Source: Octopus sinensis
Taxonomy: Eukaryota
Length of the DNA stretch: 23,134 nucleotides
Assembly (NCBI RefSeq): GCF_006345805.1
Contig: NW_021836897.1
Coordinates: 1-23,134 of the forward strand
Reading direction: 5' to 3'
Under the pieces are notes generated by a model, which did not search any database, had not been told where the DNA came from, and saw only the letters and a list, made by a program, of their open reading frames with translations. Of this stretch, positions 10,701 through 19,629 are shown piece by piece. Each line of letters starts with the position of its first letter. Positions within the stretch are counted from its first letter, which is position 1. A program made the translations under genes and the position numbers.

Positions 10701-11070
10701 AGAATTTGAAGTGAAAAGATTGCAGCCAACAATGAAACACGGCAGTTATTCTGTGATGGTCTGGGAAGCAATTTGGAGCAACGGTTGATCAGAGCTGATG
10801 GAATGTAAGGGAAACATAAGCTCAGATAAATACGTGTCCATATTGCAGAAAGGATTCCTTTCAATCTTCTCCAGTGGTAAAATGATAAAAGAAGTCTCTT
10901 TATTTATGGAACATGGGGCTCCTTGTCACTCGGCTAAAATGACTCAAGATTTGTTGGATGAGAATGGCATTAAAAAACTTCCATGGCCAAGCCAGTCACC
11001 AGATAAGAACCCTATTGAACACCTCTGGTGCATAATGGACAGGGCACTTCATAAAAAGAACAATAAAGCA
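10701..11070 (+). mobile_element. Internal fragment of the same Tc1 element as 3795-4964
   Basis: 10701-11063 matches 4351-4713 with 10 substitutions in 363 bp by manual count. It has no TIRs and contains ORF 10798-11085 (FMEHGAPCH...WPSQSPDKNPIEHLW). Confidence 0.95.
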
Positions 11071-11072
11071 TT

Positions 11073-11170: not shown

Positions 11171-11554
11171 CAAAAAACTAACTGCAACAACAACAACATA
11201 TTGTCTTTGTCGAAAATCAATAGATATTGTAATAAGAGAAACTGGTCAAGGACGGGAGTTCGCTGGCGCTACGAAGGCAATATTTGTACACATACACACA
11301 CATATACATGCACGGATACATAATATACACAAGCAGATATATAGAAGCACGCACGTACACGTGCACGTATATATGTGTGTGTATATAATGGCTTACTTAA
11401 AGCTACATCTAGTGTCTCAAGTACTGTAAGTTAAACATACAGCCGTTTGATTGACATTAGAAAATCCATAGAAAATCTCCTGAGAAAAGACAAAAAGATA
11501 AACAAAAACGGCGAACAAAGCAAAACAAATGATATTGCTGCGTGACAGACGGGG

Positions 11555-12095
11555 AAGAATAAGAAGAGGAAGGAGAAGAAGGAGGAGAAGGGGAAGAAGA
11601 AGAAGGAGAAGGAGAAGAAGAAGAGATAGTAGAAGGAGAAGAAGAAGAAGAAGAAGAAGAAGAAGAAGAAGAAGAAGAGAGATAGTAGAAGGAGAAGAAG
11701 AAGAAGAAGGAGAAGGAGAAGAAGAAGAAGAAGAAGGAGAAGGAGAAGAAGAGATAGTAGAAGGAGAAGAAGAAGAAGGAGAAGGAGAAAGAGAAGGAGA
11801 AGGAGAAAAAGGAGTAGAAGAAGAAAAAGAAGGAGGAGGAGGAGGAGGAGGAGAAGGAGAAGGAGAAGAAGATGGCGAAGAAGAAGAAGGAGAGAAAGGA
11901 GAAGGAGGAGAGGAAGGAGAAGGAGGAGTAGAAGAAGAAGAAGAGGAAGGAGAAGAAATAGAAGGAGAGGAAGGAGAAGAAGAAGAAGAAAGAGGAGGAG
12001 AAGGAGAAATAGGAGAAGAAGAAATAGAAGGAGAGGAAGAAGAAATAGGAGAAGAACAAGAACAACAACAGCAGCAACAACAAGAAGATAATAAG
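11555..12095. repeat. ~540-bp polypurine (GAA/GGA/GAG)n low-complexity tract
   Basis: Nearly pure A/G on the + strand, with a recurring AGAGATAGTAGAAGGAGAAGAAG block. It is the source of the Glu/Gly- and Ser/Pro-rich ORFs. Confidence 0.92.
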
Positions 12096-12993: not shown

Positions 12994-13361
12994 AAGTGTC
13001 TTTTAGATAATCATTAACTCTATACTGGTAACATGGGTCTTTTTTCAAATGTTTTGGTTTCCTAGCAGCCCTCCATTCCACGTGAACGTGACGCGCTGTC
13101 GGTTCAGTTACCAGCCACTTGATAGCGCAACAGCTTTTATCGTACTCTGTATTGGCAATCGTTCAAATGAGCCAAGATCGCGACGCAGCTACAACATCAA
13201 GATGGTGGCGATGATCTTTAAGGGGTTCTGTAACCCTTAATGGTCCTAGAATTCTGCACAGGCGTTGAAGAATTCCTTTAGAATGACAATTCTATATACT
13301 GAAATATAGATTCTACATTCTGCCGTGTAGTACACCTCTTCAGTTGTATGGTCAGTCATGT

Positions 13362-13725
13362 GGAGGAACAATGGTCCAGTGGTTAGGGCAGCGAACTCGC
13401 GGTCGTAGGATCGCGGTTTCGATTCCCAGACCGCGCGTTGTGAGTGTTTATTGAGGGAAAACACCTAAAGCTACACGAGGCTACACGAACCCTGCTGTAC
13501 TCTTTCACCACAACTTTCTATCATTTTTTCTTCCTGTTTCTGTAGTACCTGTATTTCGAAGGGCCTGCCTTGTCACACTCTGTGTCACGCTGAATCTCCC
13601 CGAAAACTACATTAAGGTTGCACGTGTCTGTGGCGTGCTCAGCCACTTGAATGTTAATTTCATGAGCAGACTGTTCCGTTAATCGGATCAACTGGAACCA
13701 TCGTTGTCGTAACCGACGGAATGCC
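13362..13725 (+). mobile_element. tRNA-derived SINE (family A)
   Basis: Head GGAGGAACAATGGTCCAGTGGTTAGGGCAGCGAACTCGCGGTCGTAGGATCGCGGTTTCGATTCC. Collinear with the reverse complement of 9812-10197, with a short internal deletion after GAGGCT. Confidence 0.92.
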
Positions 13726-15117: not shown

Positions 15118-15347
15118 AATAATAATAATAATAATAATAATCCTTTCTACTATAGGCACAAGCTCTGAAATAAGGGGCTAGTCAATTACATTGACTCCAG
15201 TGTTTCACTGGTACTTAATTTGTCAACCCCGAAAGGATGAAAGGCAAAGTCGACTTCGGTGGAATTTGAACTCAGAACATGAAGACAGACGAAAAGCGGC
15301 AAAGCATTTCGCCCGGCGTGCTAACGATTCTCTCAGCTCACCGCCTT
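15118..15347 (-). mobile_element. tRNA-derived SINE (family B) with (ATT)n tail
   Basis: Minus strand AAGGCGGTGAGCTGAGAGAATCGTTAGC...GAGTTCAAATTCC (B box)...GTCGACTTTGCCTTTCATCCTTTCGGGG...AAGTACCAG...GCCTATAGTAGAAAGGA(TTA)n. Confidence 0.88.
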
Positions 15348-16280
15348 GATGACTACATTATATTATATATACACATGTATGTATATACACCTAAATATAA
15401 ACGTATCAAAAACACAAATTAAAAAGCTAGAAACAAAGCGAACCACTGTGCTTGCCTAGTTTGTCGGTTCCTTCTGGCCAGTAGCAAACTATTCTACTGC
15501 TAAGTCCCTATTTCAGGAATAAATTCCTTCTCCAATCTCGGGGTCCCTGATAAGGGCCGTGAACGCCGCCATTCAGCATCTGATTAAGTCATGACAACAA
15601 AGTAGATGAAAATAGATTTACGTGTTTGAAATGTGGTCAATGGCAAAGCCAGTTTATCTAAATATGTTGAACAGAACAGAACAGACAGCCGCATCACGTG
15701 ATCTGTCGTAGGGGTTAAAAATGGCCGTTAACTCTGTAATCAATCACAAAATTGTTCATATATTTGTTTACCTTCTGGCACGAGTATTCACCTACTCAAT
15801 AGAGGTTTAGTAGAGAAGGCTGTTGGTGAGTAGGGAAGGAGGGCAACTCAGGTGCCAAAGTTAGGGTTTACCCCGGTCTCCCTCTTCCACCCCCTTATTA
15901 TTCATTTGTTTATCCATTTTTAATTTATTGTTTTTTCATTTTTGTTTTCTTTCGTTTAAAAACCTGTTTTATTGCCAAATATTGATTGACTAAAGTTCAT
16001 TTCAACTTAATGTTTCGACAAACACACACACACATATGTACATACATGTGTGTATGTACGTACGTATGTATGTACGTACGTACGTATGTATGTATGTATA
16101 CGAACTGTACAAACACCCATACCCACCACATTGCGGGGAATAACACAATTCAACGAGAGATTTATGGAAATTTTAATAAATCTAACAAATATTTTCATTG
16201 TTTGATGTGACTCGTAAATTTTCTTTTTCCTCGTATCTCGCTCCCATGTCTCTCGCAACCAAATTAAAACCAAAGAAAAA

Positions 16281-17540
16281 ACTATAACTCACTGTGGTAC
16301 CTACTTACAGCTAAGCAGACTGCACTGTCGACAGTTAAGTGTGCTAGTCATGGACACAGTACAGTGAACTATGCAAAAGTGTGGGACCTACATACGGCTA
16401 CGTAGACTGGGCTTTAGTCATTTGTGTTGGTCATGAACTTAGTACAGTGAACTATGCAACAGTGTGGGACCTACATACGGCTACGTAGACTGGGCTATAG
16501 TCATTTGTGTTGGTCATGAACTTAGTACAGTGAACTATGCAACAGTGTGGTACCTACATACGGCTAGGTAGACTGGGCTATCGTCATTTGTGTTGATCAT
16601 GACCTTAGTACAGTGAACTATACCACAATGTTGTATCTACATACAACTAGGTAGACTGGACTGTCGACAGTTAAGTGTGTTGGTCATGGATTCAATATAG
16701 TGAGCTATACCACGCTGTGGTACCTACTTACAGCTAAGTAGACTGGGCTGTTGACAGTTAAGTGTATGGGTCACAGACACAGCAAAATGTGCGAACGATT
16801 CTCCTTTACGGCAGCCAGTCATGGCCAATGAGGATGGAAGATATTAAGCGACTAGAATCCTTCGATCACCTCTGTCTACGCCGCATCCTTCGTGTCCGAT
16901 GGCATCACTTTGTCTCCAACAATTCGGTGCGACACCAGTGCAAAATCACCTCCCTCCGACAAGTCATCCTAACGAGACGTCTGCGTTGGCTGGGTCATGC
17001 TCTCCGTCATCAACCAGGAGAATTCATCTACGAAGCAATTGCCCCAGCTCCCCTTCAGGGTTGGCGAAAGCAGTGTGGTGGACAACGAAAAACCTGGCTG
17101 ATGACAGTCAAGGCTGATCTGGAACCCAACCTAGGCCCCCATATCTACGGCGTTCGCCGCTGGAATAAGGAGTGGTTGGAGATCACGCGGTCGTTAGCCT
17201 CAAATCGCCAGGCCTGGTCGGCGTTTGGGAGAGATGCAGCATTGAGGATGAATGAAGCCAGTGCAACCCACCCCGGGTGAATGCTGTAAGAAGAAGAAGA
17301 AAAATGAACCATACTACAATGTGGTACCTACTTACAGCTAGGTAGACTGGGCTGTTGACAGTTCAGTGTGTTGGTCAGGGACACAGTACAATAAACTATA
17401 TCATTGTGGTACCTACATACAGCTAAGTAGACTGCGCTGTTGACAGTTCAGTGTGTTGGCCATGGACACAGTAAAATGAGCTACACTACAGTGTGGTACC
17501 TACTTACAGCTAGGTAGACTGGGCTGTTGACAGTTAAGTA
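16281..17540 (+). repeat. 83-87 bp minisatellite array (~9 units), interrupted by an RTE insertion
   Basis: GTGG(T/G)ACCTAC-type unit starts at 16294, 16381, 16464, 16547, 16630, 16717, [insertion], 17321, 17406, 17493. Confidence 0.95.
16790..17300 (+). mobile_element. 5'-truncated RTE-clade LINE (ORF C-terminus), (AAG)n tail, 6-bp TSD AAAATG
   Basis: Open frame VRTILLYGSQSWPMRMEDIKRLESFDHLCLRRILRVRW...RRLRWLGHALR...GGQRKTW...NRQAW is the typical RTE post-RT region. Stop at 17278-17280, tail AAGAAGAAGAAGA, and AAAATG at 16784-16789 and 17301-17306. Confidence 0.93.
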
Positions 17541-17754
17541 CACAGTAAGATATGAACCTCAATACTTCGATTTATCGTCCAATATGTTATCAGTTCTGCA
17601 TTTCTCTGCTATCGAAGTTCGATCATTAACACGTTATAGAAAAAAAGATCAAATAAATATTTAAAAAAATACTTTAAAATAACTAAATAAATAAAGAATA
17701 CGTCTAAATGATTGATTTAATATTGGTTTATTAAAGGTTGTTGACGCGTTGGGT

Positions 17755-17755
17755 G

Positions 17756-17786
<31 letters not shown>

Positions 17787-18320
17787 CATGTGTACGTATG
17801 TATGTCTTTGTTCGAATGTGTATGAGTTTGTACTTGTGTGTGATTGGTATTGAATTTGTATGTAAGATTGTTTTTGTATGTGTGTGTGTGTGTGTCGGTG
17901 ATTTTTGTCATGACTGTGTGTAAGGAAAGTCTTGTGTTTGGTGTATACAGAGTGAAGTGGGGGGGTGAAAGAGAGAGAGAGAGAGAAGAAGAAAATTGAG
18001 TGAGAGGGAAACAGTCAGACGGAAAAGAAGAGAGAGAGGTAGAGCGAATGAGAGCAAGATAGAGAGTGAGAAGTAAAGAGAGAGAGAGAGAGAGAGAGAA
18101 ACAGAGATAGATAGACCTAAATATCGAGAGAGAGAGAGAGAGAGAGAGAGCTAGGTAGAGCGAGTGAGAGCATAAACAGAAGGAGAGAGAGAAACAGATA
18201 GAGGGAGAGAAACAGAGAGAGAGAGAGAAACAGAGAGACAGAAATAGACATAAATATCGAGAGAGAGAGAGAGACAGACAGACAGAGTGACAGAGAGACA
18301 GAGAGTAAGAGGAGGAGGCA
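17755..18320. repeat. (GT)n and (GA)n/(GACA)n microsatellites
   Basis: Seen directly. Confidence 0.88.
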
Positions 18321-18879
18321 GAGAGTGTCAGAAAGGTGAAAGTCTGCAATAATTCCAACCATTTATCACTTTGGTTTGTCTTGTGTTCTTCCTTATTTCT
18401 TCGTCAATGTTTTCAAATATTTTCTTATATTTTGCTTTTTTTTTCTTTATTATTTTCCGGTTTTATTTCATTTATTTCTATATACTTTGTTTCTATAATT
18501 GTTTTTCTTTGTTTTTGTTGGGTTTTTTGTTTTGTTTTTTCTTTTTTCTTTTTTTGGTTCCTTCTGTATTTTTTCTCTCCGCAGTTTCCAATTCCATCCG
18601 ACACCCTGCCTCTACCTTTCGAAGAAAAGAAATTGAACATTCCTTATCGAATTCTCCATTGATCTCTTCATTCTGTCTTCCCACTTGGCACCACTTCCAC
18701 ACTCCACTAAACTGCACCAATATTTCGGAATGTCATTGAATGGCGTTGTCTGAAGTTGAGATGTTCATGCTTTTCTCGGAGAAATTAGCTTCAGGAGCCA
18801 AATATAAGCAATTAGTAGCTTAGATTTAGATCGGGTTCTGTAGACAAGACTTAGATTGGTATTTGCATGCAAGTACTAT

Positions 18880-19274
18880 GCTGTAGTATAGAGTTCACTG
18901 TACTGTGTCCACAACCAACACACTTAACTGTCAACAGTCCAGTCTATCTAGCTGTAAGTAGATACCACACAGTGATATAGTTCGATGTACTGTGTCTATG
19001 ACCAACACACCTAATTGTCAACAGTCCAGTCTACCTAGCTGTAAGTAGGTACCACAGTGTGGTATAGTTCGCTGTACTCTCTCCATAGCCAACACAACTG
19101 TCGACAGTCCAGTCTATCTAGCTGTATGTAGGTACCACACAGTGGTATAGTTCGCTGTACTGTGTGCCCAACCAACACACTTAATTGTCGATAGTCCAGT
19201 CTACATAGCTGTAAGTAGATACCACACAGCTGTACTGTGTCCATGACTGGCACACTTAACTGTCGACAGTCCAG
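18880..19274 (-). repeat. Second array (~4.5 units) of the same 83-87 bp minisatellite, inverted orientation
   Basis: Reverse-complement units, with TACCAC ends at 18968, 19055, 19138 and 19225 (spacing 87, 83, 87). Confidence 0.95.
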
Positions 19275-19368
19275 TAGGAAAATAACTACCAGTGAAGAAC
19301 AGGGGTTCGTCTGATTGGCTTGACCTACTTCCTTGAAACCTACTGGTCCACTGCCTATCGTAGAAAGA

Positions 19369-19421
<53 letters not shown>

Positions 19422-19600
19422 GAGGCCAGCGAGCTCACAGAAGTGTTAGCTCTCCGAACGAAATACTCAGCAGCAGTTCTTCCGGTTTCACAGTTATGAG
19501 ATCAAATTCCGCCGAAGTCGATTTTTCATCCTTTCAGAGTCGGCGAAATTATGTACCAGTTGCGCACTGGGGTCAATGTAATTGACTTAATCCCATTATC
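19422..19600 (+). mobile_element. Degenerate family-B SINE, immediately after an (ATT)n tail that follows GTAGAAAGAA (3' remnant of another copy)
   Basis: GAGATCAAATTCCGCCGAAGTCGATTTTTCATCCTTTCAGAGTCG...GTACCAGTTGCGCACTGGGGTCAATGTAATTGAC aligns to the reverse complement of 15141-15347. Confidence 0.78.
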
Positions 19601-19629
19601 TCACCTCGGCACAAGAAATCCATTTCTGT

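What the first reader, a model, noticed from the sequence alone, without database searches (positions are those of the whole stretch)
16281..19274. Mirror-image minisatellite arrays: candidate foldback-type element with modular long inverted arms
Seen: the same 83-87 bp unit forms a + array (16281-17540) and a - array (18880-19274) about 1.3 kb apart. The two outermost units match at 40/41 nt (16324-16364 versus the reverse complement of 19230-19270) and share a GTGC(T/C)AGTCA variant, where inner units mostly have GTGTTGGTCA. The outer units are therefore closer to each other than to their tandem neighbours. Established: Foldback-class elements (Drosophila FB, sea-urchin TU) have long TIRs built from tandem subrepeats around a variable non-coding middle. 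Inference: a ~3-kb foldback-like element, or an inverted duplication, that I cannot assign to a known family. Caveat: the outer ends are not flush (the left extends ~45 bp further) and I found no TSD.
Basis: partly seen in the sequence, partly recalled or inferred. Interest (0 to 1): 0.78.

Follow-up and report, generated by a model that had tools for sequence, protein, structure and literature searches.

The report
Old mirror-image minisatellite inverted repeat
Two arrays of one ~85-bp repeat face each other across 1.3 kb of ordinary DNA and are decayed mirror copies of a single ancestral array, but nothing available here shows whether this is a dead foldback-type transposon or a local rearrangement.

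Summary
An 83-87-bp unit forms a + arm (16281-16789 plus 17307-~17562, about 9.5 units) and a - arm (18881-19275, about 4.5 units) around a 1.3-kb single-copy, non-coding spacer. The + arm is not continuous. A 5'-truncated non-LTR retrotransposon tail (16790-17300, 6-bp target duplication AAAATG) was inserted into unit 6 later.

The outermost units match 44/46. After removing each unit's overall closeness to consensus, mirror order is the best of all 120 orderings of the right-arm units. The arms therefore descend from one already differentiated array and are about 85% identical over 392 aligned nt.

Transposon status is not shown:
- The outer termini are not flush.
- No similarity extends beyond the arrays.
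- The only target-duplication candidate (GAAAA[T]AACTA) is not significant (P about 0.03-0.11).
- There is no transposase remnant and no second copy in the window.

The inverted similarity stops at the array edges, which argues against a random segmental inverted duplication. A decayed foldback-like element (about 0.4) is roughly as likely as the local rearrangements together (about 0.4). Interest is modest.

The parts
16281..16789 (+). Left arm, part 1. It holds a partial unit (16281-16292), then units P1 16293, P2 16380, P3 16463, P4 16546, P5 16629 and the first 74 nt of P6 (from 16716). P2-P4 are the 83-bp type, which lacks TAAG. P2 and P3 are 99% identical, indicating a recent local unit duplication.
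16790..17300 (+). A secondary insertion, not part of the repeat: the 5'-truncated 3' end of a non-LTR retrotransposon. It has an open frame (ORF 16762-17280 runs in from the array) and ends in (GAA)n plus an A run. Its protein aligns to the region just C-terminal of RVT_1 in relatives (40% identity over 93 aa). Relatives carry RVT_1 or DUF6451.
16784..16789 (+). Left copy of the AAAATG target-site duplication of the retrotransposon insertion. The second copy is at 17301-17306. Removing the insert plus one copy restores a complete unit P6 (compare the intact P8, ...ACAGTAAAATGAGCTACAC).
17307..17562 (+). Left arm, part 2: the rest of P6, then P7 17320, P8 17405 and P9 17492. P9 is certain up to 17539. 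The stretch 17540-~17562 looks like the tail of P9 after a 13-nt internal deletion (read by eye; the nhmmer match stops at 17539).
17563..18880 (.). Single-copy spacer of about 1.3 kb. It contains (GT)n at 17756-17784, a GA-rich tract at 18029-18305 and a T-rich tract at about 18380-18560. It holds no repeat units, no protein-family match, and no symmetry between its two ends.
18881..19275 (-). Right arm. Reading the - strand from the outside inwards: truncated outermost unit M0p (19275-19227, starting at unit position 27 and lacking about 15 nt of its tail), then M1 19226, M2 19139 (83-bp type), M3 19056 and M4 18969-18881.
16319..16364 (+). Best-conserved inverted pair. This block of P1 matches the reverse complement of 19230-19275 at 44/46. 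Both carry the private GTGC(T/C)AGTCA variant and an intact 12-bp palindrome, ACTGTCGACAGT.
16275..16284 (+). Candidate, not significant, flanking direct repeat: GAAAAAACTA here and GAAAATAACTA at 19278-19288. It is recorded only so that it can be tested against other copies or an empty site.
   Evidence: P = 0.03-0.11 against genomic and A-rich nulls

Best explanation
Shown: the two arms are mirror-image descendants of one differentiated minisatellite array. The structure is an old, inactive foldback-type inverted repeat, with arms about 85% identical around a 1.3-kb non-coding middle. Afterwards it decayed in place:
- CpG to TpG decay of the central palindrome in the inner units.
- Local amplification of units P2/P3.
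- A 13-nt deletion in P9.
- Insertion of a truncated non-LTR retrotransposon into P6.

[quoted passage not shown] Such an element is mobilised in trans by a transposase that would bind a site repeated in every unit. The 12-bp palindrome ACTGTCGACAGT is the obvious candidate site, though that is a guess. After insertion the right terminus lost about 39 nt or more, and with it any target-site duplication. The element has no function now.
For: - Arms are made only of tandem subrepeats, in opposite orientation and of unequal length, around a non-coding middle.
- Unit order is mirror-colinear (1/120), and the outermost units are each other's closest relatives.
- The inverted similarity stops within about 40 nt of the array edges at both the outer and the inner ends, and no flanking unique DNA is shared. 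That is expected if the arms are the repeat-built TIRs of an element. It would be a coincidence for a random segmental inverted duplication.
- Published foldback-type elements show this architecture, with variable and unequal repeat numbers and many rearranged copies. Tetris has 220-bp subrepeats, a non-coding middle and 8-10-bp TSDs, and only 3 structurally complete copies were found (PMC4079207). Galileo has long, internally repetitive TIRs (abstracts).
- The arms are too diverged (80-85%) to be an assembly artefact.
Against: - The outer termini are not inverse copies of each other. The left arm has 38 extra nt and the right arm starts mid-unit, so an extra, ad hoc terminal deletion must be assumed.
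- There is no significant TSD.
- There is no unique terminal domain, no transposase remnant in the middle or nearby, and no second copy in the 23-kb window.
- Copy number in the genome is unknown, because every route to related DNA failed.
- The higher identity of the outer pair does not need terminal conservation (P = 0.023 under uniform 85% identity). Slower turnover of edge units in any tandem array would also explain it.
Confidence: 0.38

Rival explanations
1. Local inverted duplication that is not a transposon. After a break or a stalled fork, the 3' end folded back or switched template and copied the neighbouring array in reverse. This left a single-copy spacer (the loop), and a second junction returned to the right flank at 19275/19276.
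For: - The arms are mirror-colinear.
- The single-copy spacer of about 1.3 kb lies within the 0.77-70 kb range of fold-back spacers (PMC3907307).
- The right arm has an abrupt mid-unit outer end, there is no TSD and the outer ends are not flush. All of this is expected and needs no extra event.
- Both arms appear to end at a unit boundary on the inner side (read by eye).
- The same window holds a second, young palindrome (8974-9462, arms 100% identical in blocks) centred on (AT)n. This shows that inverted duplications arise, or are assembled, in this region.
Against: - Both breakpoints of the copied segment would have to fall within about 40 nt of the two edges of a 0.76-kb array, because no unique flank is shared on either side. 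That is unlikely for random breakpoints unless the array itself directs them.
- No inverted microhomology above chance was found at the spacer boundaries.
- The documented fold-back events are Mb-scale and terminal, not 0.4-kb and interstitial.
Confidence: 0.25
2. A single ancestral + array that already contained a multi-unit (higher-order) tandem duplication was split by a small inversion of about 1.7 kb. One breakpoint lay inside the array. The flipped half of the array and its former right flank became the right arm and the spacer. No inverted duplication took place.
For: - This explains without coincidence why the inverted similarity is confined to array units and why the flanks share nothing.
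- It predicts exactly one abruptly truncated inner end and one abruptly truncated outer end. P9 (certain only to unit position 48) and M0p (starting at unit position 27) fit this.
- Block duplications inside tandem arrays are common (established knowledge).
Against: - It needs two events.
- The inversion breakpoint must coincide with the boundary of the duplicated block, so that the first unit of the flipped half is the counterpart of P1. The chance of that is about 1 in 5-9.
- M0p is not especially similar to its supposed former neighbours P8 and P9 (75-78%).
Confidence: 0.15
3. Two separate insertions, in opposite orientation, of a mobile element that carries one internal array. Examples are the tandem-repeat-containing MITEs and non-autonomous Helentrons known from bivalves.
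For: - Short satellite-like arrays dispersed by such elements are common in molluscs (abstracts of PMC3879986 and PMC7492417).
- Two copies of one master would share unit order, which would give mirror colinearity.
Against: - Those elements have conserved non-repetitive modules on both sides of the array. Here neither the outer nor the inner flanks of the two arrays share anything above shuffle level.
- Two hits 1.3 kb apart would itself be a coincidence.
- Nothing here verifies that the source is a mollusc; that idea rests only on my recollection of SINE sequences.
Confidence: 0.06
4. Independent arrays or an artefact. Either the two arrays expanded separately from unrelated seeds and the outer-outer match is chance, or the inverted arrangement is an assembly error.
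For: - 44/46 is only P = 0.023 under uniform divergence.
- The raw, uncentred order test is not significant (14/120).
Against: - The centred order test gives 1/120, and three independent characters are mirrored.
- Arms at 80-85% identity, with a private retrotransposon insertion and arm-specific substitutions, are not what a mis-assembly produces.
Confidence: 0.04

Closest known systems
Foldback-type transposons with long, internally repetitive TIRs: Drosophila FB, sea-urchin TU, Tetris (D. virilis), Galileo (P superfamily)
   Same: - Two long inverted arms built of tandem subrepeats.
- Arms of unequal length.
- A variable non-coding middle.
- No coding capacity in this copy.
- Structurally rearranged copies are the rule in published families (PMC4079207; Galileo abstracts).
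   Different: - There are no matching outer termini and no terminal flanking domain.
- There is no significant 8-10-bp TSD.
- Only one copy is known.
- The arms are only about 85% alike.
- No linked transposase is known.
- The subrepeat (83-87 bp with a 12-bp palindrome) is unrelated to any described one, as far as the tools could show.
Fold-back (snap-back) inverted duplications with a single-copy spacer (Hermetz et al. 2014, PMC3907307)
   Same: - A non-inverted and an inverted copy are separated by a single-copy spacer of kb size.
- There is no TSD.
- The far junction falls at an arbitrary position.
   Different: - The scale is 0.4-0.8 kb against Mb, and this case is interstitial rather than terminal.
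- The copied segment coincides with a tandem array at both ends.
- No junction microhomology could be demonstrated.
Tandem-repeat-carrying non-autonomous elements of molluscs: DTC84 MITE of Donax, pearl, Helentron-borne Cg170-like arrays of Crassostrea
   Same: Short arrays (a few to about 10 units) of satellite-like monomers of about 80-170 bp sit in euchromatic, repeat-rich DNA.
   Different: Those carry one array in one orientation between conserved left and right modules. Here there are two arrays in mirror image and no shared non-array module.

Membership tests
Foldback-type DNA transposon (FB / TU / Tetris / Galileo-like) | Long terminal inverted repeats composed largely of tandem subrepeats | tested here: met
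   The + arm has about 9.5 units and the - arm about 4.5 units of 83-87 bp.
Foldback-type DNA transposon (FB / TU / Tetris / Galileo-like) | The two outer termini are inverse copies of each other (flush ends or a shared terminal domain) | tested here: not met
   Inverted similarity starts at 16319 and 19275. The left arm has 38 further nt with no counterpart, and the outer flanks align no better than shuffles (414/500 shuffles reach the observed score).
Foldback-type DNA transposon (FB / TU / Tetris / Galileo-like) | Target-site duplication of fixed length (8-10 bp in Tetris and the Mutator/Foldback group, per PMC4079207) | tested here: inconclusive
   The best candidate is GAAAA-AACTA / GAAAATAACTA, abutting both boundaries. 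P = 0.106 (shuffle), 0.03-0.05 (random genomic pairs) and 0.11 (A-rich matched pairs).
Foldback-type DNA transposon (FB / TU / Tetris / Galileo-like) | Non-coding or variable middle domain | tested here: met
   The 1.3-kb spacer holds microsatellites, no Pfam match and no repeat units.
Foldback-type DNA transposon (FB / TU / Tetris / Galileo-like) | Multiple dispersed copies sharing termini, and some copies or a partner element encoding a transposase | not testable with these tools
   There is no other copy in the window. No hit was found in the metagenome, viral or prokaryotic contig collections or the protein collections. The source genome could not be reached.
Fold-back / template-switch inverted duplication | Arms are colinear mirror copies of one pre-existing segment | tested here: met
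   The mirror-order score is the maximum of 120 permutations after centring, and 392 nt align at 85.2% along one colinear path.
Fold-back / template-switch inverted duplication | Single-copy spacer between the arms, with short inverted microhomology at its boundary | tested here: inconclusive
   The spacer is single-copy and its size lies in the published range. No boundary homology above chance was found (371/500 shuffles reach the observed score).
Tandem-repeat-containing MITE / non-autonomous Helentron (mollusc type) | Conserved non-repetitive modules flanking the internal array | tested here: not met
   Neither the outer nor the inner flanks of the two arrays are similar.
SINE or structured-RNA-derived repeat | The unit matches a tRNA, 5S or other RNA family, or folds significantly | tested here: not met
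   No Rfam or ARAGORN hit falls on the arrays. Unit folding z-scores range from -0.7 to +1.0.

The most novel reading that the evidence does not exclude
This is the first recognised copy of an undescribed foldback-like transposon family in its host. From my memory of its SINE sequences, which I could not verify, the host is probably an octopod cephalopod. The family's long TIRs would be built of an 83-87-bp subrepeat. Each subrepeat would carry a 12-bp palindrome (ACTGTCGACAGT) serving as a reiterated transposase-binding site. No paper in the searched library mentions foldback elements together with cephalopods.
Probability: 0.3. Interest if true: 0.5.

Novelty: new member of a known kind. Interest (0 to 1): 0.3.

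Why it matters
If genome-wide copies with shared termini and target duplications exist, this would add a foldback-like family to a lineage where I found none described. It would also give a clean case of TIR subrepeats acting as seeds for minisatellite or satellite DNA, as argued for Tetris, and of long inverted repeats that can drive small inversions.

If it is unique to this locus, it is an ordinary fossil of a local rearrangement. It would then be useful mainly as a dated example: the nested retrotransposon and the CpG decay give a relative chronology of how tandem arrays duplicate in inverted orientation and then turn over, fastest in their interior. Either way it has no visible present function.

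Tried and rejected
Routes to other copies, all of which failed:
1. Array ORFs as a route to other genomic copies. CpG-bearing unit variants keep one frame open. However, a word-indexed search with a 111-aa consensus translation found nothing. An exhaustive phmmer search with the 72-aa window ORF returned only three unrelated repeat proteins.
2. Degenerate DNA patterns from the two most conserved cores. These gave 0 hits in metagenome contigs (two scans), viral contigs and prokaryotic genomes.
3. Exact-protein look-ups of four window ORFs. None is on record.
4. The Tc1-like fragment as a bridge to the source species. The best relatives are only 59-69% identical, and the two loci fetched share only that element at 73-76% DNA identity, with no unit and no SINE.

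Ideas about the origin of the unit, rejected:
5. Unit derived from a structured RNA or SINE. There are no Rfam or tRNA hits on the arrays and the folding z-scores are about 0.
6. Degenerate units in the spacer or beyond the ends. None were found.
7. My by-eye impression that the right arm continues degenerately for about 22 nt past 19275. It is not above shuffle level.

Other checks that gave nothing usable:
8. Transposase remnants in the spacer and flanks. None were found.
9. The raw, uncentred unit-order test was not significant (14/120). It became significant only after removing each unit's overall closeness to consensus. I report both results.
10. The many TSD-like near-matches (65 against 11.6 expected) collapse to one A-rich 10/11-nt alignment, which is not significant against better nulls.
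11. Literature on foldback elements in cephalopods or molluscs. Nothing was found.
Full report
**Context.** The window is eukaryotic, AT-rich and saturated with microsatellites (63 TRF rows). It contains the following:
- Two 97%-identical fragments of a Tc1-like transposase (DDE_3).
- Two families of SINE-like repeats.
- No RNA genes.

From memory, and not verified by any tool, the two SINE-like families resemble the abundant tRNA-derived SINEs of octopus genomes. No collection available here contains the source genome or a close relative.

**Check of the observation.** TRF, BLAST with the unit consensus and an nhmmer profile of the units all find the 83-87-bp unit at three places only:
- 16281-16789 on the + strand.
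- 17307-17539 on the + strand, probably extending to about 17562.
- 18881-19275 on the - strand.

I cut all units in one register. This gives P0 (partial) and P1-P9 on the left, and M0p (truncated, outermost) and M1-M4 on the right. The block 16319-16364 matches the reverse complement of 19230-19275 at 44/46, while every other left-by-right pair is 71-87% over the same block. GTGC(T/C)AGTCA is private to these two units. The 38 nt at 16281-16318 have no counterpart, and nothing beyond the arrays aligns above shuffle level at either the outer or the inner flanks.

**Correction to the anatomy.** The '+ array 16281-17540' is interrupted. The stretch 16790-17300 is the 3' end of a non-LTR retrotransposon:
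- It carries an open frame of 164 codons.
- Its product aligns (40% over 93 aa) to the region immediately C-terminal of the RVT_1 domain in relatives, several of which carry RVT_1 or DUF6451.
- It ends in (GAA)n plus an A run and is flanked by AAAATG on both sides (16784-16789 and 17301-17306).

Deleting the insert and one AAAATG restores a full unit P6. The right arm has no such insert, so the insertion came after the two arms separated. With the insert removed, the left arm is about 770 bp, the right arm 395 bp and the spacer about 1.3 kb.

**Are the arms mirror copies, or just the same repeat in two orientations?**
- A monotone matching of left units to right units on raw identities favours mirror order over the opposite order (0.32 against 0.18). 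It is not significant (14 of 120 permutations do as well).
- Raw identities are dominated by how close each unit lies to the consensus. After double-centring the matrix, a diagonal appears: P1~M0p, P2-P4~M2, P6/P7~M3 and P8/P9~M4. Mirror order is then the single best of all 120 orders. The result is 6/120 if the recently amplified P2-P4 are collapsed, and 2/24 if the outer pair is left out.
- Three discrete characters agree. The private outer variant is one. The 4-bp TAAG deletion (83-bp type) occurs in P2-P4 and M2. The central palindrome keeps CG in the outer units (P1, P4, P5; M0p, M1, M2) and has decayed to TG in the inner units (P6-P9; M3, M4).
- A global alignment of the arms gives one colinear path of 392 nt at 85.2% identity.

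I conclude that the arms descend from one array that already had at least 4-5 distinguishable units. The 96% identity of the outer pair does not by itself show terminal conservation. Under uniform 85% identity it has P = 0.023, and edge units of tandem arrays are known to turn over more slowly than interior ones.

**What the structure is not.**
- It is not an assembly artefact. The arms are 80-85% identical, with arm-specific substitutions and a private insertion.
- It is not derived from a structured RNA or SINE.
- It is not coding. Every frame of the consensus has stops, and only CpG-bearing variants open one frame, which gives a spurious 72-aa ORF.
- It is not a mollusc-type tandem-repeat MITE or Helentron pair, because no non-array module is shared.

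**Transposon or local rearrangement?**

For a foldback-type element:
- The architecture fits: repeat-built arms of unequal length around a non-coding middle (PMC4079207; Galileo abstracts).
- The inverted similarity ends within about 40 nt of the array edges on all four sides. A random inverted segmental duplication would hit both edges of a 0.76-kb array only by coincidence.

Against a foldback-type element:
- The termini are not inverse copies of each other.
- There is no terminal domain and no transposase.
- The only TSD candidate (GAAAA-AACTA at 16275-16284 and GAAAATAACTA at 19278-19288) is not significant once low complexity is respected (P = 0.03-0.11).
- That candidate is incompatible with the terminal deletion needed to explain the ragged right end.

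For a fold-back or template-switch duplication:
- No extra events are needed.
- The spacer lies in the published size range.
- A young, spacer-less palindrome 7 kb away (8974-9462) shows that inverted duplications occur in this region, or in this assembly.

A third possibility also explains the array-limited similarity without coincidence. A small inversion with one breakpoint inside a single array that carried a multi-unit tandem duplication would do so. It requires the breakpoint to sit at the block boundary.

I rate the foldback-like relic at about 0.38, fold-back duplication at about 0.25, inversion at about 0.15, two insertions at about 0.06, and chance or artefact at about 0.04. The remainder is unassigned.

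**Chronology (inferred).** An ancestral array formed with CpG-containing palindromes. It was then duplicated in inverted orientation, or inserted as a paired-arm element. About 15% divergence followed, with CpG decay and arm-specific homogenisation: GGACTG occurs in all right-arm units, and CAGCGAAC in M1-M2 with CATCGAAC in M3 (the C at that position also in M0p, whose tail is truncated). The retrotransposon then inserted into P6; its frame is still open, so this was probably much later. The P2/P3 duplication (99% identity) is the most recent event.

**Novelty and interest.** The kind of structure is known. The unit has no detectable relative in anything I could search, and I found no report of foldback elements in cephalopods or molluscs. 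However, a single decayed copy without termini or TSD cannot found a family. Interest is modest (0.3). It would rise to about 0.5 if the genome-wide census in the next steps finds inverted pairs with shared ends and TSDs.

Noticed in passing
window 8955-9479 (core 8974-9462): A near-perfect palindrome with arms of about 235 bp. The arms are 100% complementary in three blocks of 71, 56 and 69 nt and 97% overall. It is centred on an (AT)n run at 9191-9241 and abuts a long (TA)n at 8508-8960. It is either a very young inverted duplication or hairpin element, or a long-read foldback assembly artefact.
   Followed up: partly
window 16790-17300: A 5'-truncated non-LTR retrotransposon tail with a still-open 164-codon frame, a (GAA)n/A tail and a 6-bp AAAATG target duplication, nested in repeat unit P6. 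The closest relatives are only 40% identical (fish, amphioxus and unnamed metagenome ORFs).
   Followed up: yes
window 4351-4720 and 10701-11071: Two direct copies, 97% identical, of a 370-bp fragment of a Tc1-like transposase (Pfam DDE_3). The best protein relatives in public data are only 59-69% identical. A longer diverged stretch (about 3790-4875) aligns to the same element in the two fetched contigs, L001 and L002.
   Followed up: partly
window 6102-6279, 9821-10198, 13360-13724; and 15166-15339, 19431-19603: Two families of SINE-like repeats. Family A has three copies, two of them 86.5% identical and inverted relative to each other, with a tRNA-like head readable on the reverse strand of 9821-10198. 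Family B has two copies at 75% identity, in inverted orientation, which happen to bracket the finding asymmetrically. ARAGORN and Rfam do not call them. From memory they resemble octopus SINEs.
   Followed up: partly
window 11554-12062: A 500-bp purine-only (GAA/GAAGGA)n tract with extreme strand asymmetry (GC skew +0.6, AT skew +0.5). It produces long spurious E/R/G-rich and S/P-rich ORFs on the two strands.
   Followed up: no
window 7236-7337: A perfect (100%) 25-bp tandem repeat, 4.1 copies (CAATTAAAATTTATATTCATCATAT), sitting between (TAT)n and (TG)n microsatellites. It looks like a very recent minisatellite expansion.
   Followed up: no
window 19035-19253 (- strand): A 72-aa ORF that reads through 2.5 repeat units. 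It exists only because the CpG-bearing unit variants (CTGTCGACAG, CAGCGAAC) remove the two TGA stops of the decayed consensus. It is spurious, but it shows that an undecayed array would be one long open frame.
   Followed up: yes
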